Assembly: GCA_047495785.1 (NCBI GenBank)
Contig: JBLDXI010000017.1
Coordinates: 744,001-808,000 of the forward strand
DNA length: 64,000 nucleotides
Source of the DNA: Lepidodermella squamata
Lineage: Eukaryota > Animalia > Gastrotricha
Direction: 5' to 3'
The translations under genes and the position numbers were made by a program. Shown here one piece after another: positions 20,618 to 60,201 of the stretch. Each line of letters opens with the position of its first letter. Position 1 is the first letter of the stretch. Under the pieces are notes generated by a model. That model did no database searches. It was not told where the DNA came from and was given only the letters and a program-made list of their open reading frames with translations.

Positions 20618-22225
20618 ATGGAAGCGTTATCGAGCTCTGAAACCGAAATTTCCGACCATTTTAACGCCAGTTTCAACAACGCCAGCTCGGCCCAGATTGA
20701 GTCTCATTTCAACCTAACGAATTCCCATGAAGAAAACGGCCATGAAACCAGCAGTTCTAGCCATGGTCATCATCAAGTTGGACATGCGAATAATCATTCA
20801 AGCGATAATTACTGCTCGTTATCGCATCATATAATATGCACGAATGGTAAAATTATACCGCTGTGGCAACCGAATCCTATCACCCAATCTGGGCCTGTTC
20901 GAGCTGGCCGGTCGATTGTGCTAATGCTGGGTATGACGTGGCTGTTTTTCGGCGTCTCCGTTATTTCGGATAAATTTGTCGAAGCTATCGAAGTTGTCGT
21001 GTCGCAGAAGAAAAAAGTCCGCGTTGTTTCGCGCGTTACCGGACTCGAGGAGTACCATTACATTCCGATTTGGAACGAAACTGTCGCGCATGTAAGCATT
21101 TAATACAGGATTATGAGACATGACCCAATTTGGGACATAAGCTGTTTCCCTTTCGCACACTATTTTAAATCTCTTTTTACTTTAATTTTGAATTTTTTCA
21201 TAATTTTCCGATGACCCAGTTTCGGACAAAACTTTTCCGGTTATTTTTTGAAGGTTTTAATTTCTGTGAATTTTTAATTTTTTTTCAATTTTTTTGTTGA
21301 CTGGAAAGGGGATTTTTTAGATTTTTTAATTAAATTTTAATTTCATTTAAAAAAAATATGTTACCGTTTTCTAGCTTGCTCTTGCCGTAGTTGGCTCTTG
21401 CTCACCTGAAATTCTGCTAACAACGGTCGAAGTTCTGGCTCATAATTTCGACCTGGGCGAATTAGGACCGGCAACTATTGTCGGATCCGGTGCTTATAAC
21501 CTGTTCATAATTACCGCAATTTGTATCCTGTCGGTCAAAAAAGGCGAATCACGCAAAATCGAAGATATGCACGTATTTTTCGTCACAGGCAAGCCGTCGC
21601 GATTAATTCAAAATCTTAAATTTCAAATTTTTTTATAAAGGTGCTTGGGCAATATTTGCCTATATATGGCTGTATCTTATGATCTCTGTCATTTCTGTCG
21701 GCATTGTCGAAGTTTGGGAAGCACTTCTCACCCTGGCTTTCTTCCCACTGACCATTATTACTAGTTACCTGGCTAATAAACGCTGTTTTGGCTTGCGCGA
21801 GAAACTGAGACGAACAAATCAATCAGTTCACCCGGTTAACGAAACCCCAGATGGCAATAATGGGGAAAATTGTGATAATTCGGCCGAGACTCAAAATGGC
21901 AATTTAGCGAATGGAAACGGGGTGACTGGTGATCATCAAAATCATGACAACGGCAGCTTGGCGCATCAAGCTAACGGGAAAGCTAATCCGGCGACGGCGT
22001 CTGCTATACACATTGCGACCCATTTGAGATTTTTGACGAACAAATCAGCGCGAAATAGAGCGAATAGCAGAAAAATGGCGAATCGCCTGGAGCTTCAGAA
22101 ACAAAATGGTGACGCGCCAACTGAACAAACAGGTAAATTGATTGCTTTAATCCATATTTTGGTATTAAAAATAAAATAAAATAAAAAATAAAAAAAAATA
22201 AAAAGTGTCGCTCCTGGGTGGGCTC

Positions 22226-22265
<40 letters not shown>

Positions 22266-24739
22266 AATTGCGCCACAGAAGCACTTGAGAAAAGTAGATA
22301 GCACTTAAAACAAGTACTCACGCGTTGACAAAGCTGCATTTAGCCTTTTCTTATCAATTCACCTGTGAGCTAAGTGTTGCATACCGCATCAAAAGCTATA
22401 CCTCTAAGTTAGGAATAAAGAGCAGCGCGAAAATGGGAAATAATTGCACAATTTTGCGCAACATTCATATCATTTTCGTTATTGGAACTACCGAAGAATG
22501 CGGATGTAAGATTATTTTGATTTTTGTCAGCTGCAAATTATAAAGCAATTAACGAGTCAAATTGGAAATCAATTTCTTTTGGCCCAGTAAAATGTTGCTA
22601 TACTCTGTTATTAGGAATGTCTTAAATCTCTACTATTATATTCATAGGTAACAGCCTGCCAGTTGTTCAAAGCCCTGCTTTCAACACTGAAGACTACAAC
22701 GAATCAGGAGATGAAGACCGCACCGAAACCGCCCGGCGAATGATTGAGTCTCGAGAGCAAAATTTCCTCAGCATCGAAGCTGATTTGCGTAAACGTTACC
22801 CGGAAAAATCAAGCGCTGAAATCTACGAAATGGCCGAGATGGAACTAATTAAAAAAATCCCGAAATCCCGCGCATATTACCGAAGCCAAACCATGCGTCG
22901 CTTAGCCGGTTCTGAGGATGTTATCACGCAGAAAAAATTGAGGCAAACGATATCGCGAGCTCTTCAGAAAGTTAACGACCCAACTGCGGCGAGTTCGAAA
23001 ACTGTCTCACCACCGGACCCGACTAAACAAACCGTTTATTTCGACCCTTGCATTTACACGGTCGTTGAAGACGTTGGTAAATTTTCGTTAACTGTTGTCC
23101 GCGATGGGTTGGATTTGGATAACGAAATCTCAGTGGGTTACTCGACTCAAGACGGTACCGGCAAAGCTGGTATCGACTACAAACGCGTCGAGGGTCGTCT
23201 GAAGTTCTTACCTGGTGAATCGAAGAAATCGATCGAAGTAGAGGTGATTGACGATGAGGTGTTCAATGAAGACACGGTGTTTTATGTTAATTTGACCGAG
23301 CCTACGGTTCTGAGTAAAGGCATGGTTGCGGCTGCTTTACAACAAAATATGGGCGTGGCAACTGCGGTTCCGCTTCAGGTACGACTCGGACCTAATAGCC
23401 GGGCGATTGTGACAAAACTGGACGACGACCATGGCGGAATATTTCACGTAAGAGAAACTATTAAAAAGGTTTAGTGTTTTTTCATTTTTTCCACTTAGTT
23501 TGAGTCCGATTCGATGACAATAGAGGAAAGTGTTGGAGAAGCTTCTATCAAGGTCATTCGAAGCGCTGGTGGTAAAGGAGCTGTCACCGTGCCGCTAAGA
23601 ATCAAACCCGTCACTGCTCTAGCTAACCAGCAATACGTCGATCCCGGCCTTGTTGAAATCAAATTCGACAGCCGGGTAACAGAGGGTGTCTTCAAACTGA
23701 AAGTCATCGACGAGGGGAAGCTGAACAAACACGTATTGCTGCACTTGATCCTGGAAGAACCCAGCTGGTCGCAGCTACAACAGGATGATTTGAAAGATTT
23801 GGCTCGACTGGGCAAACCGCGGCTCAAACCGCCGATCTCTTTAGCAATTACAATAACCGAAAGCTCAAAATTGAAGCAGATAGTCGATGATTTAGCAAAT
23901 ATGGATGTTTATGCTAATTTCGTGGCGACAACAACTTGGCGGGAGCAATTTAAAGCTGCTATTACAGTTTCGGGCGGGGCCGAGAATGGCCATGAAAACG
24001 GAGAAGTAGCCAGTACGGTCAAGCCCAAGTGGTACGACTACGTTCTGCATGTTATCGCTTTCTTCTGGAAAGTCCTCATTGCCTTTGTTCCTCCTTCAGG
24101 TTAGTGTAAAATTATTTCATCATTCAGCCAGTTATGATTATTTCTTTCTTAGCTCTATGGCATGGCTGGCCAGCTGCTTTCTGCTGTTTAATCCTTATGG
24201 GCTTTACAACAGCCGTCATAGCAGACCTTGCTAATCAACTCGGTTGCACGATGGGCCTTCACGAAGACCTAACTGCTATAACCTTCGTATCTCTCGGCAC
24301 CAGCTTACCCGATCTATTCGCCTCGAGAATTGCCGCGAAAAACGAAGAAACTGCCGATGCAGCAATTGGTCATATATCCGGCGCATCGGCCATCAACGTG
24401 TTCTTCGGCATTGGGTTCGCTTGGTCGATCGCTGCCATCAAAAACTGGTCGGATGGCCGTAAACTTGTGATAAAGCCCGGCTCGCTGGGCTTCAGCGTTA
24501 CGCTCTACTTTTCATTCGCCTTTCTTGCAATTATGACGCTTATGCTTCGCCGATTGCCGCCTATCAATGGCGAACTAGGCGGGCCTACCTTCTTCCGATA
24601 TCTCACTTTCGGAGTCTTTATCACATTTTGGGTGATATACGGTGAGTCAGTCGAAATTTCGTTAATATTTTCAAAAGCACTTATATTTTTAGTTGGCCTA
24701 ACTGCATTGGATCAATATTGCGCCATTACGACGTTTTGA
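20618..24739 (+). CDS. NCX/SLC8-like exchanger copy 2 (multi-exon)
   Basis: IWNETVAH|LALAVVGSCSPE; KSRAYYR; VIDDEVFNED; KLDDDHGG; GTSLPD..GHISGASAINV; GELGGP. Confidence 0.92.
22209..22282 (-). tRNA. tRNA-Asn (GTT), antisense within an intron of NCX copy 2
   Basis: Reverse complement GCTTCTGTGGCGCAATTGGTTAGCGCGTTCGGCTGTTAACCGAAAGGTTGGTGGTTCGAGCCCACCCAGGAGCG folds as a cloverleaf with A/B boxes. A T-run terminator follows. Confidence 0.97.
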
Positions 24740-25259: not shown

Positions 25260-28200
25260 ATGGCTGAGGTTTCTACATCCGAGGAACCTTGGTCATCAAA
25301 TGATACAACAACTCCAGAGCATGGCCACGCTAGACTGATTCTGCTACCAAACTCAAGTCTTCCAGAAGAATTGGTTCAAGATAGCCACGGTTCCGGAATT
25401 TCAGGTAGTGGCAGCCATGACGCCGGACTTGACCACCATGACAGCAATGAAGACCACGGAATCTCTCACAACTTGGAAAACCATACCTCAATTCACTCGT
25501 CTGAGGAACACAGTAGCCATGGTAATAATTCATGCCACGCCTCTGTCCACTGCATACCGGGTACATTGTTACCCCTATGGAACCCTGCGCCTATAAAAGC
25601 TCGACTCGAAGATCGCGTCGCTTGGGCCATCTTCTACATCATATTAATGGTCTACATCTTCATCGGAATGTCCATTGTTTCAGACATCTTTGTCTGCGCA
25701 TTGGAGAAGATCATTTCCCAAAAGCGTCGTGTCAAAGTTTCTGAGTCGAAATCGGGCCAAGTTGTCTACGCAAATGTCCACATTTGGAACCATGTCGTAG
25801 CGCATTTGACTCTCCTTGTTTTAGGCTCCTGCGCGCCTGAAATTTTGCTATCTGTCATTGAAACCATCGCCCATTCGTTCACAGCGGGCGAATTGGGCCC
25901 TGGAACTATTGTTGGAGCGGGGGCCTATAACTTGTTCATAATACAAGCGATATGCATAGCCTCTGTTAGAAATGGGAAGTCTAAGAAGATCCGCGATTTG
26001 CGAATCTATTTCGTAACAGCAGCCTTCGCAATTTTCGCCTATATTTGGCTTTATATCATTTTGGTACCTTCGAGTCGGGGCGTTGTCGAAGTTTGGGAGG
26101 CTGTCCTTACCTTCCTAATGTACCCGCTATTGGTCTTCACAGCTTATGCCATCGACAAACATTTTTTCGGAATTTTTTCGAAAAAGAGGCGATCCTCCGC
26201 GGTAGTTCCCATCATTACGGTCGAGGAGGCCACAAGCAGTAGTGAAAGCTCGACCCCGCTACCAAACAACGCTGCTTCATCCAGCGCTGAACCTCCAGCT
26301 GAGCGAAGTAACGATGTTTTCAGTAAGATTGAGAAACGTTACCTCGAGATTACTGATGAGGTTCGAGCGAAGAATCCTAACTTGCCCACGGCAGAGATAA
26401 CACAAATTGCTGCGGTTCAGTTGCTGAAGGAGCTGCCTAAAGGTCACGGCTACTACAGAATGCAGACAGGTCGTGGCGTGGCTGGTGGTGGGGAAATTAT
26501 CAATATGAAAAGATTGCAAGAAATGCTCGCGGCGCAAGAAGAAGAGCGAAATCGAACGTTAGACCGAAATATGCAAGTCATCAGTTTCGATCCTGACCAA
26601 TACAAAGTGATGGAAAATGTTGGGGTCTTCTACGTTAATGTCTCGAGGCAAGGACGAGATCTTGACAATATTGTATTGGTTGATTATCGAACAAAAGATG
26701 GTAAAAAATCCATTCCATTTGGCTTCAATAATTAGGTACTTTTTCAGGCTCTGGAAAAGCTGGGATTGATTACGACAGCGTTCAAGGAACATTAGTTTTC
26801 AACAAAGGCGAAAAGCTGAAGCAAATACCTATTCACATCATTGACGACGATGAATTTACGAACGACTGCGATTTTCATGTAACCCTATCAAACCCGAAAC
26901 TAATTACAATTGGTCTTGCCGGCAGGGTCAGTTATCTTTAGGGTGTCATACACCTTATATATATATATATATAACCATATTCACAGGACACCAAAGTTTC
27001 ATTGGGCGAAAAAAGCACAGCAACAGTTTTTAAGATGGACGACGACCAAGGCGGACTGTTCCATTTTATGAAAGATTCTGAGAAAATTGACGAAAATGTC
27101 GGGGAAGCTTCATTAACTATTGTTCGATCTTCTGGAGTGAAAGGCCGAGTGGACGTTCCTTATAGGATAATTCCTATCACTGCGTTTCCTTACGTCCACT
27201 ACGAGGAAACTAGTACTTCAAATGTAGTTACGTTTGAAGTCCGTCAAACTGAGTAAGTTTCCTATATTCACGTATCCGTTGTTTAATCTAATTTACTTAG
27301 ACAACATGTCAAGGTCAAGATAACGAACGAAGGGAAGCTGAAAAAGGAGAAGACCTTCAAAATCGAACTAGGTGAACCGATTTGGAGTGCTAATCAACGT
27401 CAGCCCACTTTGATCAACAAAAAGCCCAAATCAAACTCTCGAAGGATGTCAGCTATGAAGTACGAACTCAACGACTTACTGAACGAGTCGCTAAATGGAG
27501 ATGGCGTAGTGGAAACATCGAAATTGGGTCGGCCTAGATTGGGCGAACCCAGTTCAATGACCGTTACGATACGAGAAAGTGAAGAGCTGCGAGCCACGCT
27601 GGAAGAGATCGTAGAAATCAGCGAGAACGTCGGCGGTCTTGTGGGAACAACTTCGTGGTCGGATCAATTTCGAAATGCAATGAAACTATACGGAGATATC
27701 GATCCAGATAGCGGGGAGATGAAAGAACCAAATTGGCGCAACTTTGTTATCCACTTCATTACAATCTTTTGGAAGGTCCTCTTTGCTTCGATACCCCCTG
27801 TTTCAATAGGGTTTGGCTGGTTATCGGCCTTTATGGCCTTGCTATTCATAGCCCTCATGACAGCGATTATTGGCGATCTTGCGTCGCATTTAGGCTGTAC
27901 AATTGGTATGCCGGATGAATTGACGGCAATAACTTTCGTCGCGTTGGGTACCAGCTTACCAGACATGTTCGCCTCTCGTTTAGCTGCGATTCGTGAAGAA
28001 TCCGCAGATGCAGCGATTGGGCACGTTAATGGAGCTGTGGCTGTCAATGTTTTTCTGGGCCTTGGCCTGCCCTGGTCTATAGCTGCGATATATCAGAACA
28101 GCATAGGGAAGCAGCTACATGTCCCACCCGGGAGTTTGACGTTTAGCTTCACTACTTTTTTGTCATTCGGCGCTGCCGGCATCTGTGTTGTGCTATTACG

Positions 28201-28339
28201 GCGTCTGAAGCCGGTTCACGGTGAACTCGGCGGCCCTGTAGTTATCCGAACGTTAACCGTAGTGTTTTTTGGTCTTCTATGGCTTGTTTACGTTATTTTA
28301 TCTGCTTTGGATAATTATTGTATAATCGTGACATTTTGA
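25260..28339 (+). CDS. NCX/SLC8-like exchanger copy 3
   Basis: VAHLTLLVLGSCAPE; GPGTIVGAGAYN; two Calx-beta domains; GTSLPD..GHVNGAVAVNV; GELGGP. Confidence 0.93.
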
Positions 28340-28517
28340 CGTGAGAAATTATAATGAATAAAACTGAGCAGATCGAACCTGTGATTTCCGGAAATGTTCT
28401 TTTTCTCAAGACTTCCGGCTGAGCTACGTTCCTTGGCGACATGGAATAACAAACGGAAAACAAATCTTTCTCAGCTATGAACTCGTGCTAATTCTGAAAA
28501 TAAGTCTATATGTTAGA

Positions 28518-31145
28518 ATGAGTAGCCACGAGCTTTCTGCTCAGCTGTTAAATGACGCCGATTTTCTGAATGGATCCGAGACCAATGATTCAAATCATAC
28601 GATACTGCATCAATCTCACTGTGCAAGGGAGCGATGCGTCGAGGGTCTCATAATTCCGATATGGCTACCGGACAATCAACACATCCCAACTGCGGAGAGA
28701 GCAGGACGAATCGTCGTCTATATTCTAGTGCTCGCCTACCTTTTCGTTGGCATGTCCATTGTCGCGGATCATTTTGTCGAAGCCATTGAAGTTATAACAT
28801 CAAAAAAGCGAAAGGTTAAGGTGGTGTCGACCAATGGTGACGTTAAAACAATTCATGTCCCGGTTTGGAACGAACAAGTCGCACATTTCACGCTGTTTGT
28901 TCTCAGCGGCTGTGCCCCTGAAATTATATTATCAGTGGTCGAAACTGTGAAAAACGACTTCGAAACGGAAGAATTAGGTCCTGGTACTATCATCGGATCC
29001 GGCTGCTACAACTTGTTCATCATCACAGGTATCTGCATTGCATCCGTAGGAAAACCAAAAAGAATCGAGGAGTTGCATGTATTCTTCATGACTTGTAAGA
29101 TTTTCATACTCAATCCTCAATAGCTCACTTCAAATGTTAATCTGTTTCAGCTACTTGGATGATTTTCGCCTATCTTTGGCTTTATTTCATCGTCGTAATC
29201 AACTCACACTCAATAATCGAGGTTTGGGAAGCTGTTGTCACACTGGCGTTCTACCCGTTGCTCGTGATATCGGCTTACCTCGTCGACAAGTACGCTCGTA
29301 ACCTTCGAAATTGCTTCAAGCGAGAGAATTCGGTATTACCTCACGTTTCACTAGCAGAACAGTCGCGTGAGGCATTGAATTGGCGCGAAAAACGATTCGC
29401 TGTTCTAATGAAGGAGCTGAGAGGAAAGAACCCTAGCTTGGCCCCTGCTGAAATTCAAGAACTAGCCGAATTGGAGATGTTGAAAGAAATGCCGAAAGGG
29501 CGTAACTACTATCGCATGCAAGCCGCGCGTCAACTCGCCGGCGGGGGAGATTTGATCAATCGCGAAAAGTTACGCGAGAAATTCATCCGTTCTGAGGGTG
29601 CATTTTCCGACCCCGAGTATCAAATGATTACTTTCGAACCGAAAACATATGTGGCTATGGAGGACAGTGGCCAATGCAAACTCACCCTAATTCGAAGAGG
29701 TTTCATCGCAAATTCAGTGAGCATTGACTATTCCACCAAGGACGGGAGTGGGAGAGCGGGGACCGACTACGTTCAGACCGACAAGTCGCTAACGTTCTTG
29801 CCACATGAGAGTCAGAAGACAATCTATATCCAGATTGTTGATGATGATGAGTTCAAAGAAAGCACGCAGTTCTTCGTTACCATCTCAAACCCTGTATTTG
29901 TTAGTGGAAAGGGGAAAGCCCCTGTTCTTGAAGGAGATACTGCCACAATAACGAAGTTGGATGACGACCATGGGGGCAATTTCCATTTTACGACAGAGAA
30001 GCTCGAGGTGGAGGAAAACTGCGGCCAAATCTCCATTCGAGTTGCTAGATCTTCGGGGGCTAAAGGCAGTGTGATCTTACCTTTGAAACTATTGCCAATA
30101 TCAGCTGAGGCTGATATCCATTACGAAGATCCTAAGATAACAGAGTTACTCTTCGATAGCCGGCAGACCGAATACGATATCCCTTTTCGAATCATAGACG
30201 AATGCACTTTGGAGCAAAAATCGGTCGAGCTCGATATCGAGTTGGGCCAACCGAGATGGGCGCCGAAACAAGATGGGAATTTGACTGTCACGAAACTCGG
30301 CCAACCCAAGCTGAAACCTCCCTCGAAGTTGCGCCTCACAATCACAGAAAATAAGAGTCTTAAGCGTATTGTCAGTGAGATTGCTGAAACCGAAGTTGGA
30401 GATTTGGTCGGTTCAACTAGCTGGAAACAGAAGTTTGTCGATGCCGTCACTCTCCAGCAAGAGAAAGGTGAATCTAAAAGGAAAATATGCCTCAAATATT
30501 GCATGCACGGTTTGACTATTTTCTGGAAAATTGTCTGCGTCTTCATCCCTCCAACAGGTATTTTTTCATCTCCCAAAATTAAAGCAGTATTCTCAGATTT
30601 TTATAGCTTATCTCGATGGATGGCCTGCGTTCTTCGTCGCCCTTTGTCTCGTTGGGATACTGACAGCAATAATTGGTGATATCGCGAACGCATTAGGCTG
30701 TACGATAGGTTTAGCGGATGAGCTCACTGCTGTTACCTTTGTATCATTGGGGACCAGCTTACCAGATCTGTTCGCAAGTCGCATCGCTGCGTTGAAAGAG
30801 GACTCAGCCGACGCGGCAATAGGACATGTATCCGGTGCGAACGCGGTCAACGTATTTCTCGGCATTGGGCTAGCTTGGTCGATGGCTTCTATCAAGCAGC
30901 AAAGTGATGGACATGCTCTGCATATCAATGTCGGAAGTTTCCCGTACTGCATCATTCTGTTTTTCAGTTTTGCGACTTGTGCTGTTGTCGTACTTTTCCT
31001 TCGAAGATTGCCACCAATTCGCGGCGAACTTGGTGGGCCTAAAATTCTGAAGTATCTGACTCTAGGCTTCTTCGTATCATTATGGCTGGCTTATATTGTA
31101 TTGGTAGCCTTGGACACGTACTGTATTGCTAGGCCGAATTTATGA
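28518..31145 (+). CDS. NCX/SLC8-like exchanger copy 4
   Basis: VAHFTLFVLSGCAPE; IVDDDEF; KLDDDHGG; GTSLPD..GHVSGANAVNV. Confidence 0.93.
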
Positions 31146-31418: not shown

Positions 31419-34103
31419 ATGACAGTCTCTGATATCAGCAATCATCTCAAATTGAATTCAAGTAATTATAGCTTAGAAAATCGCACGAATTCGACGATTC
31501 GGTGCGCCACTGAAAAATGCACGGATGGCAAATTGATTCCACAATGGCTTCCTGATGTCCACTACGCCTCACCAGTGGACCGAACTGGTCGCATCATAGT
31601 CTATATCCTATCACTTTTCTATTTATTCGTCGGCATGTACGTTGCATCTGACCGTTTTGTGGCCGCTATTGAGGTGGTTACCTCACAAAAGCGGCGTGTC
31701 AAAGTCGTCTCGAAAAGTGGCCATGTCGAATACGTTCGAGTTAAAGTCTGGAATGAAACAGTCGCTCATTTAACGCTATTCGTTCTGGGCAGTTGTGCCC
31801 CTGAAATTTTTCTCTCCGTTGTTGAAATTGTCACTAATGACTTTCAAACCGAGGAATTAGGTTTGAAAAATGTCTTTTTCTGGGCATATTGAGGTCATTG
31901 TCCCTCTTTATAACAGGTCCTGGAACGATTGTTGGTTCAGGATGCTACAATCTATTCGTGATAACAGGAATATGCATTGCATCTGTCGGCAAGCCTGCGA
32001 AGAAAATTGGCGAATTGCCGGTGTTTTTCACTACTGGTAAGGATTGAATAGCTTTTCTGTTATCATTCAATTTTACCTATGTTAACAGCTGCTTGGAGCT
32101 TATTCGCTTACCTATGGTTGTACTACATTATCGTTCTCAATTCTTATGCCGTTATTGAAGTTTGGGAGGCTTTGTTGACCCTAATCTACTACCCCGCCAT
32201 GGTAATATCAGCTTACCTTGTCGAGAAGTACGCTCCTTTAGTAAAGGCATGCCTGAAAAAAGGCAGCGCAGTTCAACCTCACAGCGAAGCTCAACAAGCC
32301 ATCGAAGCGATAGACTGGCGAGAGCGGCGCATTGCCGTCATAATGAAGGACTTGAGAGCAAAATACCCGGACAAGTCATCGACAGACATTCAAGAAATGG
32401 CCGAGCTCGAACTGTTGAAGGAGATACCTAAAGACCGAAACTTCTACCGAGTGCAGGCTGCTAGGCAAATGGCTGGTGGAGGTGATATTATAAACCGAGA
32501 GAAGGTTCGCAGCGTATTTGCCCGAAATGAATCTCGAAATATCGAAGTGAAAGACTATGATTCTCATGTAATTTCTTTCGATCCCGTCTCGTACACTGTT
32601 ATGGAAGACTGCGGAAAATGCAAGCTAACGGTCGTCCGCCAGGGCCTAAACCTCGGCAACACAATTACCGTTGACTATTCGACAAAAGAATATACAGGGA
32701 AGCCTGGGGTCGATTACGTCCACATTGCGAAGAAGCTTACATTTCATCCCCACGAAAACAGCAAAAACATCTACGTCGAGATTATCGACGACGAATTTTA
32801 CAATGCTGATACTCAATTCTTTGTGGAGCTTAGTAATCCAGTTCTCATCAGTGGCAACGGCGTTGTGCCTAAATTACGTGATGAAACGGCAACAGTCACG
32901 AAGTTGGAAGATGATCAGGGTGGATTTTTCAGTTTTGAAACCAGCGAGACTACAGTGGAAGAAAATTGCGGCCAGGTCAGCATTAAAATTCTCAGAAGCA
33001 GCGGCGCTAAAGGAACTGTAATTCTGCCGTTCAAATTGGAACCAATCACCGCAAAACCAGACGTTGATTACGATGATCCGGGGCGGAACGAAATCGTATT
33101 CGATCACCATCAAACTGAGTATGAAATGCGAGTCGCAATCATTGATGAATGTAAGGTCGACGTGAAAAATGTCCAATTTGCTATGACTATCGGGAATCCT
33201 GTGTGGGCGACACCCGATCAACACGACGTAGCCAATGTTGACACTCAACATCTCGGTAAACCAGGACTTGGATCACCGTCAAGATGCGTGATAACCATAA
33301 CGCAAAACAAAGGGCTCGAGAAGATTTTGAACGACATAGCTGAAACTGATGTTGGTCAATTGATTGGGACAACTACTTGGACTGAGCAGTTTAAGGAGGC
33401 GATCACAATACCGCGCGATCCTTCGAATCAATCAAAGATGCGCTTGGTACTAGATTTTGCCTTTCACATTCTTACAGTTTTCTGGAAAATACTGTTCGCA
33501 GCCATACCACCAACAGGTAATTCTTGCAATGGCGATTTTGAATCTTATTGACAGTATTTCATAGGTTATTTAGGCGGCTGGGCTGCTTTTTTCACTTCGT
33601 TTGGTTTAATCGGCCTTATGACGGCCGTGATTGGTGATTTGGCTAACGCTATCGGCTGCACCCTCGGGCTTGCTGATGAACTAACTGCTGTTACATTTGT
33701 CTCCCTCGGAGCATCTCTCCCTGACTTATTCGCAAGCCGAATCGCAGCTATTCGCGAGGACTCGGCCGACTCAGCTATAGGCCACGTAAATGGGGCCAAC
33801 GCTGCAAATGTGTTTCTCGGAATCGGATTAGCCTGGTCAATTGCAGCAATCAAGCAAAGCAATGACGGCCATGATCTTCACATAAATGTCGGCAGTTTCC
33901 CGTATTGTGTCGTCCTATTTTTCAGTTTCGCCAGTTTTGCCTTGATGATTTTGTTGCTACGCCGGTTACCACCAGTTCGCGGAGAACTTGGCGGTCCATT
34001 GGTGATCAAATGTGCAACTGTCGGGGTGTTCTGGGCCCTCTACGCTTCTTACGTGGTGCTGGTTGCCCTAGATACTTACTGCATAGTAAGACCGAATTTA
34101 TAA
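31419..34103 (+). CDS. NCX/SLC8-like exchanger copy 5
   Basis: VAHLTLFVLGSCAPE; Calx-beta pair; GASLPD..GHVNGANAANV. Confidence 0.93.
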
Positions 34104-49000: not shown

Positions 49001-49089
49001 CGACAGGTGTCTTATTCTTTTCGTTATGGGTGCTTTATATAACACTGACAGCACTTGAGAGCTATTGTGTTCTGAATGTTTCTTTCTAG
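46008..49089 (+). CDS. NCX/SLC8-like exchanger copy 9 (strongly altered ion site)
   Basis: VAHLTLFVLGNSAPE; APMVILGSQFNLF; Calx-beta pair; GVSLPD..GHMMGRIGVSIY. Confidence 0.92.
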
Positions 49090-49835: not shown

Positions 49836-52800
49836 ATGGGCGGCGGATCAGCTGCAACAGCTGGTAACGGCACTGTATCGTGTGCAACTATCACTTGCAG
49901 CCATTCAGAGTTTATACCGCAATGGATGCCTTACCCCAACCAAATCTCTGTCGGGGAACGAGTTGGAAGAGCCATCGTATATATCCTCATACTCGCTTAT
50001 CTTTTCATCGGAATGTCAATGGTATCAGACACATTCTGCGCAGCAATCGACCACATCATCACACGGAAGAGGAAGGTGAAAATCACATCTCGACTAACTG
50101 GATCTGTCCAATATGTGCAAATACCCATTTGGAACGAAACAGTGGCTCATCTAACCTTGTTTGTATTGGGCAATGTCGCTCCAGATATCCTACTCACCTT
50201 AATCGAGGTGATACTCAACGACTTTGATCCCGGACATCTTGGTCCTTCTGTGATTATCGGAACCGGTGCGCTTAATCTTTTCTTCATACAAACGGTATGC
50301 ATATGCGTGGTTGAAAAGAATCATGCGAAAAAAGTGGAACACATGCGATTGTACTTCCTAACTAGTAAGTCCCACTTAAATTTCATACTGTGTTTATGAC
50401 CTATTATTTTTTAGCCGGTTGGTTTTTGTTCGGCTATCTATGGCTATATTTTATTTTGGTCCCAATTTCAAATGGAATAATCGAGCCATGGGAATCCTTT
50501 CTGACCCTGTGCTATTTCCCGATGCTCGTCGTCTCTGCATATATTGTCGACCGCAATTTTTTCGGCTGCTGTGCTCGACTGAAGCGGCGAGCTATTAGGA
50601 CAATTTCCCCTTCTCTAAGTAAAGCTACAACAAACGTTTCTGTGATACCCATGCCTGCGCAATCAGTCTCGGATTCAACCACTGAGGTTACAACAGAAGG
50701 ACTGGAAACCCACATGGATCATGAGGATGAATTCGAAGCAGCCCGACAGGTCAGCTATCTTTTTTCTCCCTAGGAATGCTCTTTAAACGTTTTTAATCAA
50801 AATAGGCTTTAGAGAAAAGACAGCATCGCTTCTTGGCACTTCTCAAAGAGATGCGGGCGAAACACCCGAATAAAACTCAGCAGCAAATTCAGGAATTAGC
50901 CGAGCGCGAGCTTATTAAAGAGCTCCCGAAGAGCCCTGGCTATTATCGAATGTTGGCTTCAAAAGGCTTATCAGGTGGTGGTGATATTATCAACAAGGAA
51001 AAACTCAGAATGAAATTTGACGTAAGTCAATTTGGATGGGGGTCAAATTTGTGTCTAATTCCAGGATATCGATTTATAGATAAATAAGAAAAAAGACGTT
51101 CGACTGAGTGACCCAGCAGCTCAGGTCCTGACATGCGACCCTGCCGAATATATCGTGATGGAGGATTGTGGGTCATTCCAAGCAAATGTGACCAGGCTTG
51201 GTAACAACCTGGACAACGTAGTGTCAGTGGATTACGAAACCGAGGACGGCACTGGTGTTGCTGGGAGTGACTATGAAACCGTTAGAGGACGCCTGATATT
51301 CAAAAATGGGGAACACACCAAGCATGTGACAATCAAAATTATCGACGACGATGTATTCAATCTGGATACCGTTTTTTATTTGAAACTTTCCAATCCAGTC
51401 CTAGTTGATCCTGGACCTCACAAAAAACTCGTAATTTCGAGGTTCCGTGTTTCATTCCTAATATTCTTTTATATTACAGATCCCGAAACTATCACTCGAC
51501 CCTGAGGGCAGTAAAGCGAAGATAACAAAAGTTGACGACGACCATGGCGGAATTTTTCACTTCCAGAAGTCAAAAGTCACAATAGAAGAGGATGTTGGTG
51601 TAGCTGCGTTTCATGTTACTCGAAGTTCAGGAGCTAAGGGCTGCGTTGCTGTCCCATTCCATATAGAAGCCGCATCAGCCCAACCCGGTATTCACTTCAT
51701 TCCACCCTCGTCGAACCTAATAATATTCCAAAATCGAGAGACTGAGTAATTTCACCATATCCCTCTTAATCATTGTTAACATTATTCCCTTTCAGAAAAT
51801 TATTGAAGATGAAAGTTATCAATGAAGACCGTCTCGTGAAAAAGGTTCAGTTTGAAATAGAACTGGAGGAACCCTATTTCTATGAGGGCAAATTGGAGCA
51901 GAGCAATGGCTTCCCCCATAAAGCAAAGTTAACAAAACAACAATCAGAACAGTCTGCCGAAGAAAAAATCGAGACAAAAAACCTTGGAAAACCGAAACTT
52001 GGCGAGGACTCGAAAGTCGTTGTGACTATCACAGAGAACACTGGACTTCGAAATGCTGTCGATAACATAGCGAATATCGACCTGAACGATTTAGTGGGTG
52101 CTGTTTCTTGGAAGGCGCAGATTAAGGAGGCTATCGCTCTACCAACTCAGGCCCTTAACGATGAAGATGGAGATGGCGATGTCGACGAAGATGATGCAGT
52201 TGTTAGGAAAACACCATGGAAAGTCTATATATTCCACTATCTAACTCTCTTCTGGAAAATTCTCTTCGCCCTCATCCCTCCGACATGTAAGATTGATCTA
52301 TAAAATATCGCAATTCTCATTAAGAATTTTTGAAATTTTAGATATGCTTGGTGGCTGGTTCTCATTTTTCTGGGCCTTTGGTTACATTGGTGTAATCGTT
52401 GCAATAATTGCCGATATTTCCAAGCAATTGGGCTGTGTCCTTGGCTTGAAAGATGAAATTACAGCTATCACGCTTGTCTCATTTGGCACTAGCTTGCCTG
52501 ATCTTTTCGCAAGTATCCTCGCCGCGAAACGGGAGGAACACGCCGATTCAGCTATTGGTCACGTTAATGGGTCGTGTGGCGTCCTCGTCTTTCTCGGCAT
52601 CGGCATCAGCTGGACGGTGTGCTCGGTGAAAAAAGCCATCGATGGCAAAGAGCTGCGCGTTCAACTGCGTGGTTTTACGTTTTCCATCACAATTTTCCTT
52701 ATATTCGCGCTTCTTACAATCGCTGTGCTTCTGTTCCGCCGACGGCCAGCTGTCGGCGGTGAACTGGGCGGGCCGACGTTCTACCGCGTGTTAACCGGCG

Positions 52801-52880
52801 TTTTCTTCATGTTCTTATGGTTCACTTACGTCTTGTTGAGTGCGTTGTCAAGTTACTGCATAATCAATCCGCTATTTTAA
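49836..52880 (+). CDS. NCX/SLC8-like exchanger copy 10
   Basis: VAHLTLFVLGNVAPD; IIDDDVFNLD; GTSLPD..GHVNGSCGVLVF. Confidence 0.92.
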
Positions 52881-53533
52881 GTGTTTGAACGACACAGCTA
52901 CATAGTTTTGTATATTATGAGTCATTTTTACGCCTGAATATTATAATATAATTCACTTGTGAGTGACGCAACCAATAAATTTAAAACGAATCTATAAGGC
53001 TTCCTGCAACAGACTGAAACAGCCATTATGATGGGAAATCCAGGCGGATGATACCAGGAACCTCTAAGCTTTGTTGCCGAAATTCGTTAGATACGTTATT
53101 GATGATTCTTTGGCATTTCAATCGCACCCGTTTCCTCGACGGAAGTTATATAACATTCGGAAAGAGGCATAGGCCTTTTTACTTGAGTGACCACCACCTT
53201 GAGAACTAGCTAGACAGGATATGCTGTAAGCTGTAAGACGAACACTCTATAGGCTTAAATGAGTGGGATGAAAAGTCCCGAACATACAATTAATCGATCG
53301 AGTACTTGTTGTGAGCAATAAATCGAAGACAATCCTGGTTAAGTGAGACAACTTGCTCAATCCATCGATTTATAGCGGAGCAAGTTGTTGTGGTGCAGCC
53401 GATCGAAAAAGCTCGTTTTGCATCATGAATATTGAATGAAAAAAATCTCCCAGAAAGAAATTAAGCCCAGATATATCAGCATATAACTGTCATTTTCCCA
53501 ATAACTCGAGCGCCACTACTATATTCTTCAGCA

Positions 53534-56500
53534 ATGACCGGAGATTCTCATGGGTAATTTTTGACGAAATATAAATATCAAGTAACATAGTTGTCATCTT
53601 TAACGTCAGAGTCCACTCTTCAGAAACAGCTGAGCATGAAAGCTCCGGTGGCTGTGGCGCTGTCGGTTGCAGCCACACTGAATTCATACCGAATTGGAAC
53701 CCTTCGGCTTATCTCCTGTCGACCGAGGAACGCGTCGGCCGCGCAGTGGTCTACATCACAGTTCTTGCCTACTTATTTCTCGGAATGTCGTTAGTTTCTG
53801 ACAAATTCTGCGCTGCAATTGACCGAATTATCACGCAGAAGCGAAGAGTCAAGATCACATCGAGACTTACAGGAAGCGTGGAGTATGTTCAAATTCCTGT
53901 TTGGAATGAAGCTGTAGCTCATTTGAGCTTGTTCGTTCTGAGCAATGTTGCTCCAGATATTCTGTTATCACTCATTGAAGTTATTACTAATGATTTCAAT
54001 GCTGGAAAATTAGGACCTGAGATCGTCATCGGCTCTGGAGCTATCAACTTGTTCCTAATCCAAACGGTTTGCATTCTTGTCGTTGAGCCGAACAAAGCTA
54101 AACGAGTAGAACATCGAAGGCTCTACTTCCTAACAGGTGATTTGGTTGTAATGAATTCTCAATAGATTAGCATGTTTTTCCCACAGCTGGTTGGTTTCTC
54201 TTCGGATACCTATGGCTATACCTCATCCTGGGACAAATATCTCCTGGAGTGATAGAGCCTTGGGAATCTCTAGTCACCCTATCATATTTCCCACTGCTTG
54301 GTAAGTGGCTGTTTAGAGTGGACTATGTATTCCCTAATCTTTGAATTTTCCAAGTAATTACTGCTTACATCGTTGATCGAAATTTCTTCGGTCTCTGCAA
54401 ACGGCTTCAAGCTAGGTCCGGTGCAGTGAGCCCAGAATCTCACCGCAGTCAGTCAGAAATACAGACAGAAGACCTTGACCACGAGGACGAACTTGAGATC
54501 GCGCGGCGAACCCTTGAACAGCGCCAACTCCGCTTCATCGAGTTAATGAAGGATATGCGGAAAAATCATCCTAATAAAACTCAGCAGCAAATACAAGAGC
54601 TAGCTGAGCAAGAAGTCATCAATGAAATGCCGAAATCACCGGGTTATTATCGAATGCTTGCTTCGAAAGGATTATCAGGAGGTGGGGATGTTATAAACAA
54701 AGAAAAGCTCCGCATGAAATTTGAGGTAAGTAATAATCAGCCAATGCCATAACCACATTAATTTGATCGGCTTAAAAGATGAACAAGGTGAGCGACTCAC
54801 GTTTCAGCGACCCTTCAGTTCAAATAATCGCTTTCGACCCGGCTGAGTACATTGTTATGGAGGACTGTGGATCATTCAACGCTCACGTTACACGGCAAGG
54901 AAAAAATCTCGATAACGTTGTCGCGGTGGACTACTCAACCGAAGACGGTAAGAAAAACCGAATTGCTGAGTCGAAGTCACCAGGCCTTTACATCTCCGCT
55001 AGGTACTGGAATTGCGGGCAGTGATTACGAGGCAGCTAGCGGGCAGTTGTTTTTTGAAAAAGGAGAATCGTTGAAACATATCACGATCAAAATCATTGAC
55101 GACGATTTTTTCAACGTTGATACGGTCTTCTATTTAAAGCTGTCTAATCCTACTGTTGTTGACTCAGGTGTTAACAAGAAAATTGTGAGTTGCACTTTCC
55201 AGCTTTGCATTTATCTAACACTTACTTCAAAATCTAGACACCATGGGTTTCGCTAGACAAAGAAGCAATGAAAGCTAGAATTGTTAAAGTGGATGACGAT
55301 ACGGGTGGTATTTTCAAGTTCCCAAAGCCTACCATGGTAATTGAAGAACATGTCGGAACGGCTGTTTTAAAAATTTCCAGAAATTCTGGTGCCAAAGGGA
55401 CGGTAGCTGTTCCTTTCAAAATTATACCAGGTACGGCTCTGCCGGGCGAGCATTTTCTACCCCCACGCGAAACTGAAATCGTCTTCGAACACAGGCAGAC
55501 TGAGTAAGCCTTGCCATCACTATAAGCACATTAAAGTTGGCCTATTTACATTTAGGAATTCCATTCATGTCGGAATTATTAATGAAGATAAACTGGCCAA
55601 AAAAGTTGAATTCGCCATCGAGCTGGGAGAGCCTTACTTCTTAGAAACAGGCATTGTTCAGAAAGTTAAAGAAGGTGCGTTGCGTAATCGTCAAGCTAGA
55701 GGCGGAGATAAGGTTATTGACGTGAAAAACCTTGGCAAACCGAAACTGGGAGATGAGCCTAAGCTTATGGTTACCATCTCTGAAAACAGCAATCTTCGAC
55801 ACGCCGTAGATAACATTGCGAACATTGACATGAATGAACTAGTAGGGGCTGTTTCTTGGAAGGCGCAATTTATTGAGGCAGTCACACTTCCTAAAGCGAC
55901 AGTGAATACAGATGAGGACGACGATAGTTCGGCAAGCAAGCGGCCTCCAATCAAGGCCTACATCTTTCACTTTTTAACCCTTTTCTGGAAAGTTGCTTTT
56001 GCCTTCATCCCTCCGACACGTAAGTCCTGTCTAAACAAATTAACACTCTTCTTATCACATATTTATTTTAGACATTTTGAAAGGTTGGGCTTCTTTCCTC
56101 GTTGCCTTCATTTTCATCGGAGTTATAATTGCTATTATCGCCGATATTTCAAAGCAGCTTGGATGCTGCTTAGGCCTACGTGATGAAATCACTGCAATCA
56201 CTCTCGTCTCATTCGGAACCGGCTTGCCTGATTTATTCGCTAGCATTTTAGCCGCAAAGCGGGAAGAAACAGCCGACGAGGCTATAGGTCACGTCAATGG
56301 ATCCTGCGCAGTTTTGGTTTTTCTCGGTATCGGTTTGAGCTGGACAGTTTGTTCGTTCAAGCACGCCATCGACGGCAACGAGATGAGGATACAACTACGA
56401 GGCTTTTCGTTCTCAATAACGGTTTTCTTGACCTTCGCCGTTTTAGCTATAATAGTTCTACAGCTGCGACGGCTTGCGCCAGTTAACGGCGAATTGGGAG

Positions 56501-56610
56501 GATCCACACTGTTTCGCATAATTACGGCGATTTTCTTTGTATCGCTTTGGGTTATTTACGTCACTCTGAGTGCACTTTCAAACAATTGCACCATAAATCC
56601 ACCGTTTTAG
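53534..56610 (+). CDS. NCX/SLC8-like exchanger copy 11 (short first exon MTGDSHG)
   Basis: ATG 53534 splices in frame to VHSSETAEHES..CGAVGCSHTEFIPNW; VAHLSLFVLSNVAPD; GTGLPD..GHVNGSCAVLVF. Confidence 0.9.
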
Positions 56611-57195: not shown

Positions 57196-60100
57196 ATGGC
57201 TGGCGATTACTATGAGGGGCTCAGAGAAGAAGTCCAGCCAACGAAAAGCCAACGGTATGAGAATGCCACATCGGAACCATCCGTTTACCCAGAATCTCGA
57301 GGTGACATTCACAGCCATACCGATAGTCACGATTTCAACGTTTCAAGCTACAATCACAGCTCAAAAACGAGTCACAGTGAACATGACCATTGCTCTGTTA
57401 CTGGCGATTGTGAAGCCGGTCTATTGATCCCAAGCTGGCAGCCTCCTCCTAATCAGATATCAGTAGAAGAGCGAGCTGGTCGAGCTATTCTTTACATAAT
57501 TTGCATGGCCTACCTTTTTCTAGGCGTCTCAATCGTCGCCGATAAATTTGTTACTGCTATCGAAGTTATCGTCTCGAAGACACGAAAAGTAGAGGTCGTC
57601 TCCAGGACGACTGGTCGGAAAACGTATGTTCGGATCCCTATCTGGAATGAAACTGTAGCACATCTGACGTTATTTGTCTTGGGTAACTGCGCTCCTGAAA
57701 TTCTGCTGACAGCTATCGAAGTAATAAATCGTGATTTCAAGGAAGGCGAACTTGGGCCAGGTTTTTCCCTAAGAGCGCATTTGAGAAAATTATTCATTTT
57801 TCAATTTACAGGAGCTATCATCGGATCTGGCGCTTACAACTTGCTAGTAATAACTGGAATATGCTGTCTATCTGTTCCACAAGGCCGAGTTTTGCGACTG
57901 CATGAACTGAGAATCTTCTTTGTAACCGGTAATAAGCCCGCAAAGCTCCAGCTAATCAATTAATTTTGTGAATTAAACATTTCTAGCTGCATGGATGATT
58001 TTCGCTTATCTATGGGTCTACATTATAACAATAGTTTCCACGAAGGGAGTCGTAGAAGTTTGGGAGGCAGTTACAACGCTGTTTTTCTTTCCGCTATGCG
58101 TTACATCCGCCTACGTAGCAGACAAGCGATGTTTTGGAATTTTCAAACGAAATCGAGTCGCTCCTGACGCTGAAACTGATGTTGAAAAGGCTCAAAGTGC
58201 CTTGGAAATTCGTGAACAGCGGTTTCTTTCTATTTTAGCCCAAGTGAAGAAGAAACATCCAAATCTGAGTATGGCAGAAAAGCGGGAGAGAGCAGAAATG
58301 GAGCTATTGAGAGAGGGCCCAAAGAATCTAAATTACTACAGAATGGAAGCCGGAAAACGAGTTGCTGGCGGCAGTGTAATCAATAGAGAAAAGCTTCGCG
58401 AAAAAATAGCGGTGAGTTAATATGATTGATCCTCCAAAGTCGGCCTTGAACTTCTCCTAGGCTGATGAAAATTCTCGAGACAAATTCAACGATCCATCCA
58501 TTCAAGAAATCGGATTCGATCCAACTGATTATTCTGTAATGGAGAATGCAGGAACGTTAATGCTTCACGTCGTCCGCCGAGGTGCTGATCTGAACAACTC
58601 CATCTCCGTAGACTTTAAAACCGTCGATGGGACAGGCAAAGCTGGCTTCGATTACTATCAGTCGGTGGGCACTCTAGTATTCAATAATAAAGAGTGTGGC
58701 AAATTGATTTCCATTAAAATCATTGACGATGACGAATTCAACATGGATACGCAATTCTACCTAGTTCTCGAAAATCCCAAACCGATAATTCCAAAAGGAG
58801 CATCACAGGCTGTAGCTGTAAGTTATGCATTCAAATTACAGGTTAATATTGTGTCTTGGATATAGGCCAAACTTAACGGATTGCAACTTCGAATCAAAGA
58901 TACAGGGACAGCAACGGTCAACAAACTAGATGATGATCAAGGTGGAATTTTTTCTTTCGATGCAGACGAAACTACCGTTGATGAAGGTTGTGGTTATGCA
59001 AACATTAGAATCACGAGAAGCGGTGGTGCAAAGGGAGACGTCTCCTTGCCTGTGAGTTTCTTGCCACTGACCGCCAAAAAGGGACTACATTACGACGATG
59101 CTGGAACTCAAAGCTTGCTATTTGTAAACGGCTGCGTTGAGTGAGTCTTCTAAAACTTGAAATTCAACCTTGGAGTTTTACATTGCTATAATCAGAAATA
59201 TTCTTCGGATCAAAATCATCGACGAAGGCTCGCTGAATTCAAAATCTGCGGTTCTCAACTTGCAGTTAGGCGAGCCCGAATGGGTAACCCCTGACAGCGA
59301 GCATGTTGGAGCCAAGCTGCGCAAAAGACGCTCCACGGCAGACATGGGAACTTCGAAACTGGGAAAGCCCCGTCTTGGGGATATCAAGTCTATTAAAATA
59401 ACAATAACTGAGGACCCTGAATTAGGAAGAGCAGTTGCTGATTTAGCAAACACCGAGCTGGGCAGTCTCGTCGGCTCTGCATCTTGGGCGGGGCAATTTC
59501 GAGAGGCGGTCACTCTACCAAAAATCGAAACCTGCGATGAAGTTGAGGAGATTGAAAATGGTAACAAATCCCGCTCTTCGTCAGGAGTGAAATGCCGCAA
59601 TGTTCTTCACTTCTTGACATTATTTTGGAAAATTGTATTTGCCTTCATACCACCACCCAGTATCGGCCAAGGCTGGCCCGCGTTTTTCGGTTGTTTAGCT
59701 GCAATTGGTCTGCTAATAGCTTTAGTTGGGGATTTCGCCAGCTATCTAGGCTGCACTGTTGGCTTGAAAGATGAACTAACCGCTATCACTTTTGTATCTC
59801 TTGGCGCTAGCTTGCCGGACACTTTCGCCTCTAGAATAGCTGCTATGAAGGAAGACACAGCCGATGCAGCCATCGGGCATGTAACTGGCGCTTGTGCTGT
59901 CAATATTTTTCTCGGAATTGGCATAGCCTGGAGCTTGGGTGCGTTCTATCAAACGGCTGTGAATGGCGCTGATGGCCTTACGATAGAACCTGGCACCCTA
60001 TCTTTCAGCTTGACGCTGTTTTTCTCCCTCGCCTCTGCTGCTGTTATCATTCTTCTACTCAGGAGGTTACCTCCTGTACGTGGCGAGCTAGGGGGAAAAC

Positions 60101-60201
60101 AGCCCGTTCGTCTATTAACTACGCTAGTTTTGTGGTTTTTATGGATCTTGTACGTCGTGTTGTCTGCGTTAGACAGTTATTGCGTAATTCAAACTTTTTA
60201 G
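57196..60201 (+). CDS. NCX/SLC8-like exchanger copy 12
   Basis: VAHLTLFVLGNCAPE; IIDDDEFNMD; KLDDDQGG; GASLPD..GHVTGACAVNIF. Confidence 0.93.

What the first reader, a model, noticed from the sequence alone, without database searches (positions are those of the whole stretch)
20618..60201. Coordinated rewiring of one Na+ site: Ser->Cys (TM2), Ser->Ala and Asn->His (TM8), suggesting a new substrate or stoichiometry
Canonical NCX motifs are GSSAPE (alpha-1) and IGNVTGSNAVN (alpha-2/TM8). Seen: all 12 copies have His in place of the TM8 Asn (GH/AH). Copies 2-8 and 12 have Cys at the second Ser of alpha-1 (GSC/GGC/SGC/GNC-x-PE), and exactly the same 8 copies have GA in place of GS in TM8. In 11/12, VAH replaces VSN/VAN at the start of TM2. 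Known from the archaeal NCX_Mj structure (recalled): the equivalent T50, S51 and S236 ligate the inner Na+ site and N232 lies one helical turn away, while the outer-site and Ca2+ ligands (PE, GTSLPD, TM3 GS) are mostly retained here. Inference: the inner Na+ site is replaced by a Cys/His pocket, giving proton-coupled or electroneutral exchange or soft-metal (Zn/Cu/Cd) transport. This would parallel the separate origin of plant MHX from NCX.
Basis: partly seen in the sequence, partly recalled or inferred. Interest (0 to 1): 0.93.

Follow-up and report, generated by a model that had tools for sequence, protein, structure and literature searches.

The report
Sodium-calcium exchanger genes with rebuilt ion site
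An invertebrate genome carries twelve old, intact, tandem copies of a sodium/calcium exchanger in which residues of one of the three sodium sites, almost unchanging across 150 other exchangers, are replaced by cysteine, alanine and histidine, so these proteins probably no longer exchange 3 Na+ for 1 Ca2+; this is untested.

Summary
Twelve intact NCX1-type (SLC8) genes lie head to tail on the + strand. The first, at 13.7-19.9 kb, lies outside the stated range.

- All twelve have His at the TM8 Asn (NCX_Mj N232), and 11 of 12 have His at the TM2 "VSN" Asn.
- Copies 2-8 and 12 have Cys at S51 and Ala at S236.

S51 and S236 are two of the five ligands of the inner Na+ site (Sint). N232 hydrogen-bonds T50, a third ligand, at the cytosolic entrance.

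Among the 150 nearest database cluster representatives, none has Cys51. Only a metagenome orthologue has Ala236. Only that orthologue and one nematode fragment have His232.

The paralogues are old: silent sites are saturated and synonymous codons vary at the conserved Cys, His and Ala. Orthologues in a second species keep the pattern.

The "coordination" is not shown. Cys and Ala map to one or two events on the tree, giving a single independent contrast.

Function is untested. Most likely Sint is lost or occupied by a basic side chain, giving Ca2+ exchange with fewer Na+ or with H+, as published for NCLX. Soft-metal transport and ordinary exchange are not excluded.

The scan earlier noted a similar nine-gene array 246 kb upstream in the same genome.

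The parts
13773..19915 (+). Copy 1, divergent NCX gene, 9 exons, about 811 aa. TM2 VKN and GFSAPE; TM8 LAH and GSNAVN. His232 codon at 19403. It belongs to the sister clade, not to clade X.
20618..24736 (+). Copy 2, about 942 aa. VAH / intron / GSCSPE; IGH..GASAIN. His42 21089, Cys51 21399, His232 24371, Ala236 24383. Orthologue of metagenome gene LA.
25260..28336 (+). Copy 3, about 974 aa. VAH GSCAPE; TM3 VGAGAYN (S77->Ala); IGH..GAVAVN. His42 25803, Cys51 25830, His232 28022, Ala236 28034. Orthologue of LB and LC.
28518..31142 (+). Copy 4, about 840 aa. SGCAPE (T50->Gly, S51->Cys); IGH..GANAVN. Cys51 28911, His232 30825, Ala236 30837.
31419..34100 (+). Copy 5, about 842 aa. GSCAPE; GASLPD (T209->Ala); IGH..GANAAN. 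Cys51 31794, His232 33783, Ala236 33795.
34571..37266 (+). Copy 6, about 849 aa. GGCAPE; IGH..GANATN. Cys51 34967, His232 36949, Ala236 36961.
37799..40669 (+). Copy 7, about 850 aa. GGCAPE; IGH..GANAVN. Cys51 38213, His232 40352, Ala236 40364.
42912..45544 (+). Copy 8, about 842 aa. GGCAPE; IGH..GANAVN. Cys51 43293, His232 45227, Ala236 45239.
46008..49086 (+). Copy 9, about 930 aa. GNSAPE (Ser51 kept); GVSLPD; LGH..GRIGVS. Arg at the S236 position (48781) and Ser at 240.
49836..52877 (+). Copy 10, about 870 aa. GNVAPD; IGH..GSCGVL. Val51, Asp54, Ser236, Cys237, Leu240.
53653..56607 (+). Copy 11, about 855 aa; the true start was not found. SNVAPD; GTGLPD; IGH..GSCAVL.
57196..60198 (+). Copy 12, about 914 aa. 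GNCAPE; GASLPD; IGH..GACAVN. Cys51 57688, His232 59878, Ala236 59890, plus Cys237. In-frame 51-nt intron at 57761-57811.

Best explanation
Shown: the twelve genes are intact members of the SLC8 (NCX1-type) exchanger family. Each has ten TM helices, two alpha-repeats and two Calx-beta domains. Eleven of them (copies 2-12) form an old clade, here called clade X, shared with at least one other species. In eight of these, the inner Na+ site (Sint) has lost its hydroxyl ligands: S51->Cys, S236->Ala, and in four copies T50->Gly as well. The Asn that braces T50 at the cytosolic mouth (N232) is His. The two carboxylates of the Ca2+ site and most outer-site ligands are kept. Inferred: these proteins still carry Ca2+ but can no longer bind a third Na+ at Sint. 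A protonatable His may take the place of that cation; copy 9 has an Arg at position 236 itself, and LB has an Arg at position 42. The exchange would then run with fewer Na+ (for example 2Na+:1Ca2+, electroneutral) and/or with H+, and would depend on pH. The published parallel is NCLX. It lacks the same serines (S51, S236, S77), shows no Na+ sites, and was reported to exchange H+ for Ca2+.
For: Family and fold: human NCX1 is the best PDB sequence match, E 1.6e-85 and 2.5e-83. Pfam finds Na_Ca_ex twice, Na_Ca_ex_C and Calx-beta. An AF2 model of orthologue LC has pLDDT 83.5 and its best fold match is human NCX1 8sgj, E 3.7e-55. Residue mapping. Site chemistry: PMC5133943, PMC4753433, PMC10897212. 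Rarity. Age and selection: all 12 models are open. Fourfold sites differ at 0.67-0.74 in every pair, while TM dN is 0.16-0.44. Cys is coded by TGC or TGT, His232 by CAT or CAC, and Ala by all four GCN codons. Orthologues LA and LB keep Cys, His and Ala at 53-57% protein identity. Basic residues in or near Sint: copy 9 Arg236, LB Arg42. NCLX precedent. The copy 3, LA, LB and LC lineages also lost S77, giving the full NCLX-like set of three serines.
Against: No transport data exist. In NCX_Mj, S236A has almost no effect and S51A keeps 10-25% of kcat/Km, so the single changes alone do not abolish Na+/Ca2+ exchange. Cys is nearly isosteric with Ser, and a water molecule could complete the site. 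No coordinates were available, so the His-to-Cys distance is inferred from the published N232-T50 hydrogen bond, not measured. LC has Thr232, Gln42 and Gly236, so the His residues are not obligatory in the clade. The tethered-cation idea rests on my own knowledge of other transporter families.
Confidence: 0.45

Rival explanations
1. These are ordinary Na+/Ca2+ exchangers with tuned kinetics. Sint still binds Na+ through backbone carbonyls, Asp213 and water. The His shifts the inward/outward equilibrium, as N232A does in NCX_Mj. The paralogues differ in affinity, regulation or tissue.
For: S236A is near wild type and S51A is partly active in NCX_Mj. N232A changes Kint about 20-fold with little effect on kcat. 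The Ca2+-site carboxylates, Sext and N81/N240 are kept in most copies.
Against: Positions 51, 232 and 236 are nearly invariant across NCX in the 150 nearest cluster representatives, so the combined loss is unlikely to be neutral. Four copies also lose the T50 side chain. NCLX, with the same serine losses, shows no Na+ sites.
Confidence: 0.28
2. These are soft-metal transporters or metal-gated exchangers. Cys51, His232 and His42, together with Glu54 and Asp213, form a Zn2+/Cd2+/Co2+-type site. The protein then moves or senses a transition metal.
For: The 97-residue alpha-repeat core has no Cys or His in 12 of 13 canonical rows, but 3-5 in the window copies. Extra Cys occur at position 79 (copies 4-8) and 237 (copies 10-12). 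The extracellular N-tails of copies 2-9 and 12 are 11% His (57 of 514) against about 2.5% overall.
Against: The His-rich tails are absent from LA, LB and LC, which share the Cys/His pocket. LC lacks both His residues. The geometry was not measured. There is no precedent for metal transport in SLC8 proper. The tails are low-complexity sequence.
Confidence: 0.17
3. The copies are decaying or non-transporting duplicates, such as pseudo-transporters or sensors, and their odd residues reflect relaxed constraint.
For: Many pocket positions vary between subclades. The CBD1 acidic cluster is partly lost in clade X.
Against: All 12 reading frames are open. Silent sites are saturated while the TM domains keep dN at 0.16-0.44. 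Cys, His and Ala are conserved with varying codons and across species.
Confidence: 0.08

Closest known systems
Human/mammalian NCX1 (SLC8A1; PDB 8sgi, 8sgj, 8jp0)
   Same: Ten TM helices, two alpha-repeats, CBD1 and CBD2. TM halves are about 45-50% identical. The Glu/Asp carboxylates, N81, N240 and most Sext ligands are kept.
   Different: In 8jp0 chain numbering (my residue count from the alignments): N136->His, S145->Cys, S144->Ser/Gly/Asn, N833->His, S837->Ala. A141->Val. The CBD1 E451 and E454 equivalents are lost. Some copies have His-rich N-tails.
NCX_Mj (M. jannaschii, PDB 3V5U and 5HWY)
   Same: Same alpha-repeat core, and it provides the residue map for Sint, Sext, SCa and Smid.
   Different: NCX_Mj has no cytosolic loop. 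It carries T50, S51, S236 and N232 where these copies have S/G/N, C, A and H.
NCLX (SLC8B1), reported as an H+/Ca2+ exchanger (PMC12571890)
   Same: Loses the Na+-ligating serines S51 and S236 (and S77, as in copy 3, LA, LB and LC). It is the precedent that such loss removes the Na+ sites.
   Different: NCLX belongs to a different branch (CCX), has no Calx-beta domains, and has GNGAPD/GNSIGD motifs with Asp at both carboxylate positions. Here the scaffold is SLC8, and the replacements are Cys and His rather than Gly and Ala.
Plant MHX (Mg2+/H+, Zn2+ exchanger derived from NCX)
   Same: An NCX-derived lineage with a changed substrate.
   Different: MHX replaces Glu-113 with Gln and has lost the long loop and the CBDs. 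The window genes keep both.
Nine-gene divergent NCX array 246 kb upstream in the same genome (scan note s1-379568)
   Same: Same genome, tandem, intact, with ion-site residues replaced. The ordinary NCX gene lies beside it.
   Different: I could not read that DNA. Whether it belongs to clade X or to the copy-1-like clade is unknown.

Membership tests
SLC8 / NCX (Na+/Ca2+ exchanger) | [quoted passage not shown] | tested here: met
   [quoted passage not shown] NCX1 alignments cover TM1-5 and TM6-10.
SLC8 / NCX (Na+/Ca2+ exchanger) | Large cytosolic loop with two Calx-beta domains (CBD1, CBD2) and Na_Ca_ex_C | tested here: met
   PF03160 with two stretches and PF16494. The fold search matches CBD12 structures. 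The CBD1 acidic cluster is partly substituted.
SLC8 / NCX (Na+/Ca2+ exchanger) | Groups phylogenetically with animal NCX rather than with NCKX, CCX or CAX | tested here: met
   Tree: clade X plus the copy-1 clade (100/99) sits within the canonical animal NCX rows. The best named full-length relatives are fish NCX1 at 52-56% identity over TM6-10. No NCKX, CCX or CAX rows were included in the tree.
SLC8 / NCX (Na+/Ca2+ exchanger) | Canonical twelve ion-coordinating residues (GSSAPE, GS..N, GTSxPD, GSN..N) | tested here: not met
   S51->Cys/Val, S236->Ala/Arg, T50 variable and A47->Val. In some copies S77, T209, E54 and N240 also change.
SLC8 / NCX (Na+/Ca2+ exchanger) | Electrogenic 3Na+:1Ca2+ exchange | not testable with these tools
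   Needs flux or patch-clamp measurement.
NCLX / CCX (SLC8B1) | GNGAPD and GNSIGD signatures, no Calx-beta domains | tested here: not met
   Calx-beta domains are present. Only copies 10 and 11 approach GN-APD in alpha-1. The NCLX structure is a weak fold match, E 9e-5.
Plant MHX | Glu-113 -> Gln and a short loop without CBDs | tested here: not met
   Glu (Asp in copies 10 and 11) is kept at position 54, and the CBDs are present (PMC3355786).
CAX (H+/Ca2+) | GNxxE(H) alpha-repeat signatures, 11 TM helices, no CBDs | tested here: not met
   The alpha-repeats are of the G-x-C/S-A-P-E and GTSLPD type. CAX structures did not appear among the sequence matches.

The most novel reading that the evidence does not exclude
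On an SLC8 scaffold, a Cys/His (or Arg) lined inner site has replaced one Na+ site. This yields a new coupling mode within the NCX family proper. One version is H+-coupled or electroneutral Ca2+ exchange through a titratable His acting as a built-in cation. The other is exchange or gating by a transition metal such as Zn2+, with the His-rich extracellular tails acting as metal collectors. Either way the eleven paralogues (plus nine more upstream) would be a lineage-specific radiation of ion specificities.
Probability: 0.3. Interest if true: 0.85.

Novelty: new variant of a known kind. Interest (0 to 1): 0.62.

Why it matters
How CaCA exchangers choose their counter-ion and set their stoichiometry is still debated. 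NCLX was reassigned from Na+/Ca2+ to H+/Ca2+ exchange only in 2025.

This array offers natural variation on the best-understood scaffold, NCX1, for which structures and assays exist. It provides graded variants of one defined site:
- Ser/Ser/Asn in the canonical gene elsewhere in the genome;
- Cys/Ala/His in eight copies;
- Ser/Arg/His in copy 9;
- Val/Ser/His in copies 10 and 11;
- Cys/Gly/Thr in a relative from another species.

Each variant has been kept by selection for a long time. Expressing a few of them would test directly which ligands set the third Na+ and electrogenicity.

Tried and rejected
- A word-indexed protein search with the central 506-aa ORF of copy 4 found nothing close, only Calx-beta hits and one 33% NCX. 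It was too insensitive and was abandoned.
- NG86 dN/dS could not be computed. dS was undefined for every pair because of saturation. I used fourfold-site divergence and codon variation instead.
- The test of 'coordination' by independent contrasts gave only one contrast, so it has no power.
- Literature on the TM2 Asn (NCX1 N101) and on S110C or S838A mutants was not retrievable. The search found nothing relevant and the 1996 JBC paper is not held. I cite no mutational data for NCX1 itself.
- P0170 (apparent Thr232/Ala236) and P0046 (apparent His51) were rejected as a mis-called gene and an alignment artefact.
- P0121 (Soboliphyme, His232) did not group with the window genes. It sits on a long branch, so I treat it as possibly independent.
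- The organism was not resolved. Introns of about 50 nt with GTAAG...TTTCAG ends fit a nematode or a rotifer, and earlier scan notes disagree.
- Residue distances could not be measured, because the structure tool returns no coordinates.
Full report
**What is there**

The window is eukaryotic. Introns are mostly 47-67 nt with GTAAG...TTTCAG-type ends. On the + strand lie twelve head-to-tail genes, each with two Na_Ca_ex membrane domains, a Na_Ca_ex_C segment and Calx-beta domains. Their best solved relative is human NCX1, with E 1.6e-85 for the N-terminal half and 2.5e-83 for the C-terminal half of copy 3.

I built spliced models with a small protein-guided script. All twelve give open frames of 811-974 codons. 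The junction search only accepts stop-free joins, so openness across exon junctions is partly by construction. Copy 11 lacks an identified start. Copy 12 has an in-frame 51-nt intron at 57761-57811.

The first copy (13773-19915) lies outside the finding's coordinates. The range 20618-60201 runs exactly from the ATG of copy 2 to the stop of copy 12. A Cys-loop channel gene interrupts the array between copies 7 and 8 (scan note s1-402318).

**Check of the observation**

- His replaces the TM8 Asn in 12 of 12 copies.
- VAH replaces V[SA]N in TM2 in 11 of 12 copies; copy 1 has VKN.
- Cys replaces the second Ser of G-S-S-A-P-E in copies 2-8 and 12.
- The same eight copies have G-A for G-S in TM8.

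The claim that the other ligands are "mostly retained" holds, with exceptions: copy 3 S77->Ala; copies 5 and 12 T209->Ala; copy 9 S236->Arg and N240->Ser; copies 10 and 11 S51->Val, E54->Asp and N240->Leu.

**Is it unusual?**

An exhaustive HMMER search of 1.84 billion cluster representatives, using the C-terminal domain of copy 3, returned 150 best NCX proteins. These include vertebrate and nematode sequences; most carry no source name. In an alignment of them:
- Position 42 is Asn in 70 of 76 and never His.
- Position 51 is Ser in 78 of 84 and never Cys.
- Position 232 is Asn in 143 of 150.
- Position 236 is Ser in 147 of 150.

The only His232 rows are P0030, which is the orthologue of copy 3 from a metagenome, and P0121, a partial Soboliphyme baturini protein. 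The only real Ala236 is P0030; P0170 is a mis-called gene.

A second search with the metagenome orthologue LC found, after itself, only fish NCX1 at 52-56% identity. No named proteome in that collection therefore holds a closer relative. Published nematode NCX have GSSAPE and GTS(I/V/L)PD (PMC4232491).

**Where the residues sit**

HMMER aligns copy 3 to NCX_Mj with His on N232, Ala on S236 and the retained Asn on D240. The alignment to human NCX1 places Cys on the S51 equivalent and the TM2 His on the Asn that corresponds to Mj position 42.

The published structural work states the following.
- Sint is formed by A47, T50, S51, E213 and S236. Sext is formed by A206, T209, S210, E54 and S77 (PMC5133943).
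- N232 is not a ligand. It sits at the cytosolic entry and hydrogen-bonds T50. N232A shifts the inward/outward equilibrium about 20-fold (PMC4753433).
- In inward-facing human NCX1.3 the equivalents A141, S144, D813 and S837 are the cytosol-accessible ones (PMC10897212).
- G833, the residue before the TM8 Asn by my count from the alignment, lines the cytosol-accessible SEA0400 pocket (PMC12119087).

So Cys51, Ala236 and His232 do cluster at Sint. This follows from the alignment plus published contacts. I could not measure distances, because the modelling tool returns no coordinates. The position of His42 near the cytosolic path to Sint is inference from helix periodicity only.

An AF2 model of the intronless orthologue LC is confident (pLDDT 83.5, above 90 in the TM helices). 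Its best fold match is human NCX1.

**History**

A maximum-likelihood tree gives a fully supported clade X (100/100). It holds copies 2-12 and three tandem genes (LA, LB, LC) from a metagenome contig of another species (L001). The subclades are (c2, LA), (c3, (LB, LC)), (c4-c8), (c9, (c10, c11)) and c12; their order is unresolved.

Copy 1 groups with further metagenome genes of that same species, which has a second array (L005). An earlier scan note reports nine more divergent NCX genes, plus the ordinary NCX gene, 246 kb upstream in this genome.

Fourfold-degenerate sites differ at 0.67-0.74 in every pair, even c10/c11 at 66% protein identity. dN in the TM domains is only 0.16-0.44. The duplicates are therefore old and under purifying selection.

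At the key sites the amino acid is constant while the codon drifts: Cys is TGC or TGT, His232 is CAT or CAC, and Ala uses all four GCN codons. LA and LB keep the Cys, His and Ala pattern. LC has Cys51 with Gly236, Thr232 and Gln42.

**"Coordinated"?**

On the tree Cys51 needs two changes and Ala236 three. Only one independent contrast exists (sign test p = 1). A tree holding all Cys bearers together is not rejected (AU p = 0.14). The perfect overlap of the two traits across eight copies is therefore what shared ancestry alone would give. It is compatible with functional coupling but is not evidence for it.

**Mechanism**

In the eight copies Sint keeps only the Val47 backbone carbonyl, the Asp213 carboxylate and a variable residue 50, which is Gly in four copies. 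The Ca2+-site carboxylates and, in most copies, Sext are intact. I infer that Ca2+ is still bound and that the third Na+ is not.

Three further observations point the same way.
- Copy 9 puts an Arg at position 236 itself.
- LB puts an Arg at position 42.
- The copy 3, LA, LB and LC lineages have also lost S77. That gives the same three-serine loss (S51, S236, S77) noted in NCLX, which has no Na+ sites and was reported to exchange H+ for Ca2+ (PMC12571890).

A His next to two carboxylates would plausibly be protonated and act as a built-in cation. That idea is my inference from other transporter families and is not tested here.

Against this reading, S236A is nearly silent and S51A keeps 10-25% activity in NCX_Mj. 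Ordinary exchange with altered kinetics therefore remains a serious rival.

The soft-metal idea gains some support.
- The alpha-repeat core has 3-5 Cys plus His, against none in 12 of 13 canonical rows.
- The extracellular N-tails of copies 2-9 and 12 are 11% His.

It is weakened because the orthologues in the other species lack those tails, and LC lacks both His residues.

**Verdict**

The structural reading is supported. Coordination is not shown. Function is untested. This is a new variant within SLC8, not a new kind of system. The same genome holds a sister array that the scan already noted.

Noticed in passing
window 20618-20851, 25260-25565, 34571-34705, 46008-46130, 57196-57423 (N-terminal tails of copies 2, 3, 6, 9, 12): The extracellular tails before TM1 are His-rich: 57 of 514 residues (11%) over copies 2-9 and 12, for example EHPVEDHGGGDHGDDHGDGG in copy 9. 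The whole proteins have about 2.5% His. The tails are absent from the orthologues LA, LB and LC.
   Followed up: partly
window 48781 (copy 9) and L001 4071 (LB): Arg occupies the S236 ligand position in copy 9. Arg occupies the TM2 position 42 in LB. Both are basic side chains in or near the inner Na+ site.
   Followed up: partly
CBD1 of copies 2-12 (for example window 29159-30562 for copy 4): The CBD1 acidic cluster DDDxFEEDE is DD[DE]xF[NKT]x[DS]T in clade X, so the E451 and E454 equivalents are lost. Copy 1 keeps DDEEYEDDE. The regulatory Ca2+ sensor may also be altered.
   Followed up: partly
window 49836-56607 (copies 10, 11): These copies combine GNVAPD or SNVAPD in alpha-1 with N240->Leu and Cys237. 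This is a second, different remodelling that resembles the NCLX alpha-1 motif (scan note s1-402143).
   Followed up: partly
window 40826-42602: A Cys-loop ligand-gated channel gene fragment sits between copies 7 and 8 of the array. ORF 42297-42602 ends in a TM4-like helix.
   Followed up: no
window 3586-6057 (- strand) and 8872-10439 (+): Upstream of the array lie an IRG-like GTPase ORF, a non-LTR reverse-transcriptase ORF and a C-type-lectin-like ORF.
   Followed up: no
L005 1-12571 (metagenome contig, same samples as L001): A second tandem array holds at least four copy-1-like NCX genes. They have N81->His, S210->Gly and Ser, Gly or Gln at position 232.
   Followed up: partly
window 57761-57811: An in-frame 51-nt GT..AG intron lies inside the TM3 coding region of copy 12. 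If left unspliced it would insert 17 residues between the alpha-1 helices.
   Followed up: yes
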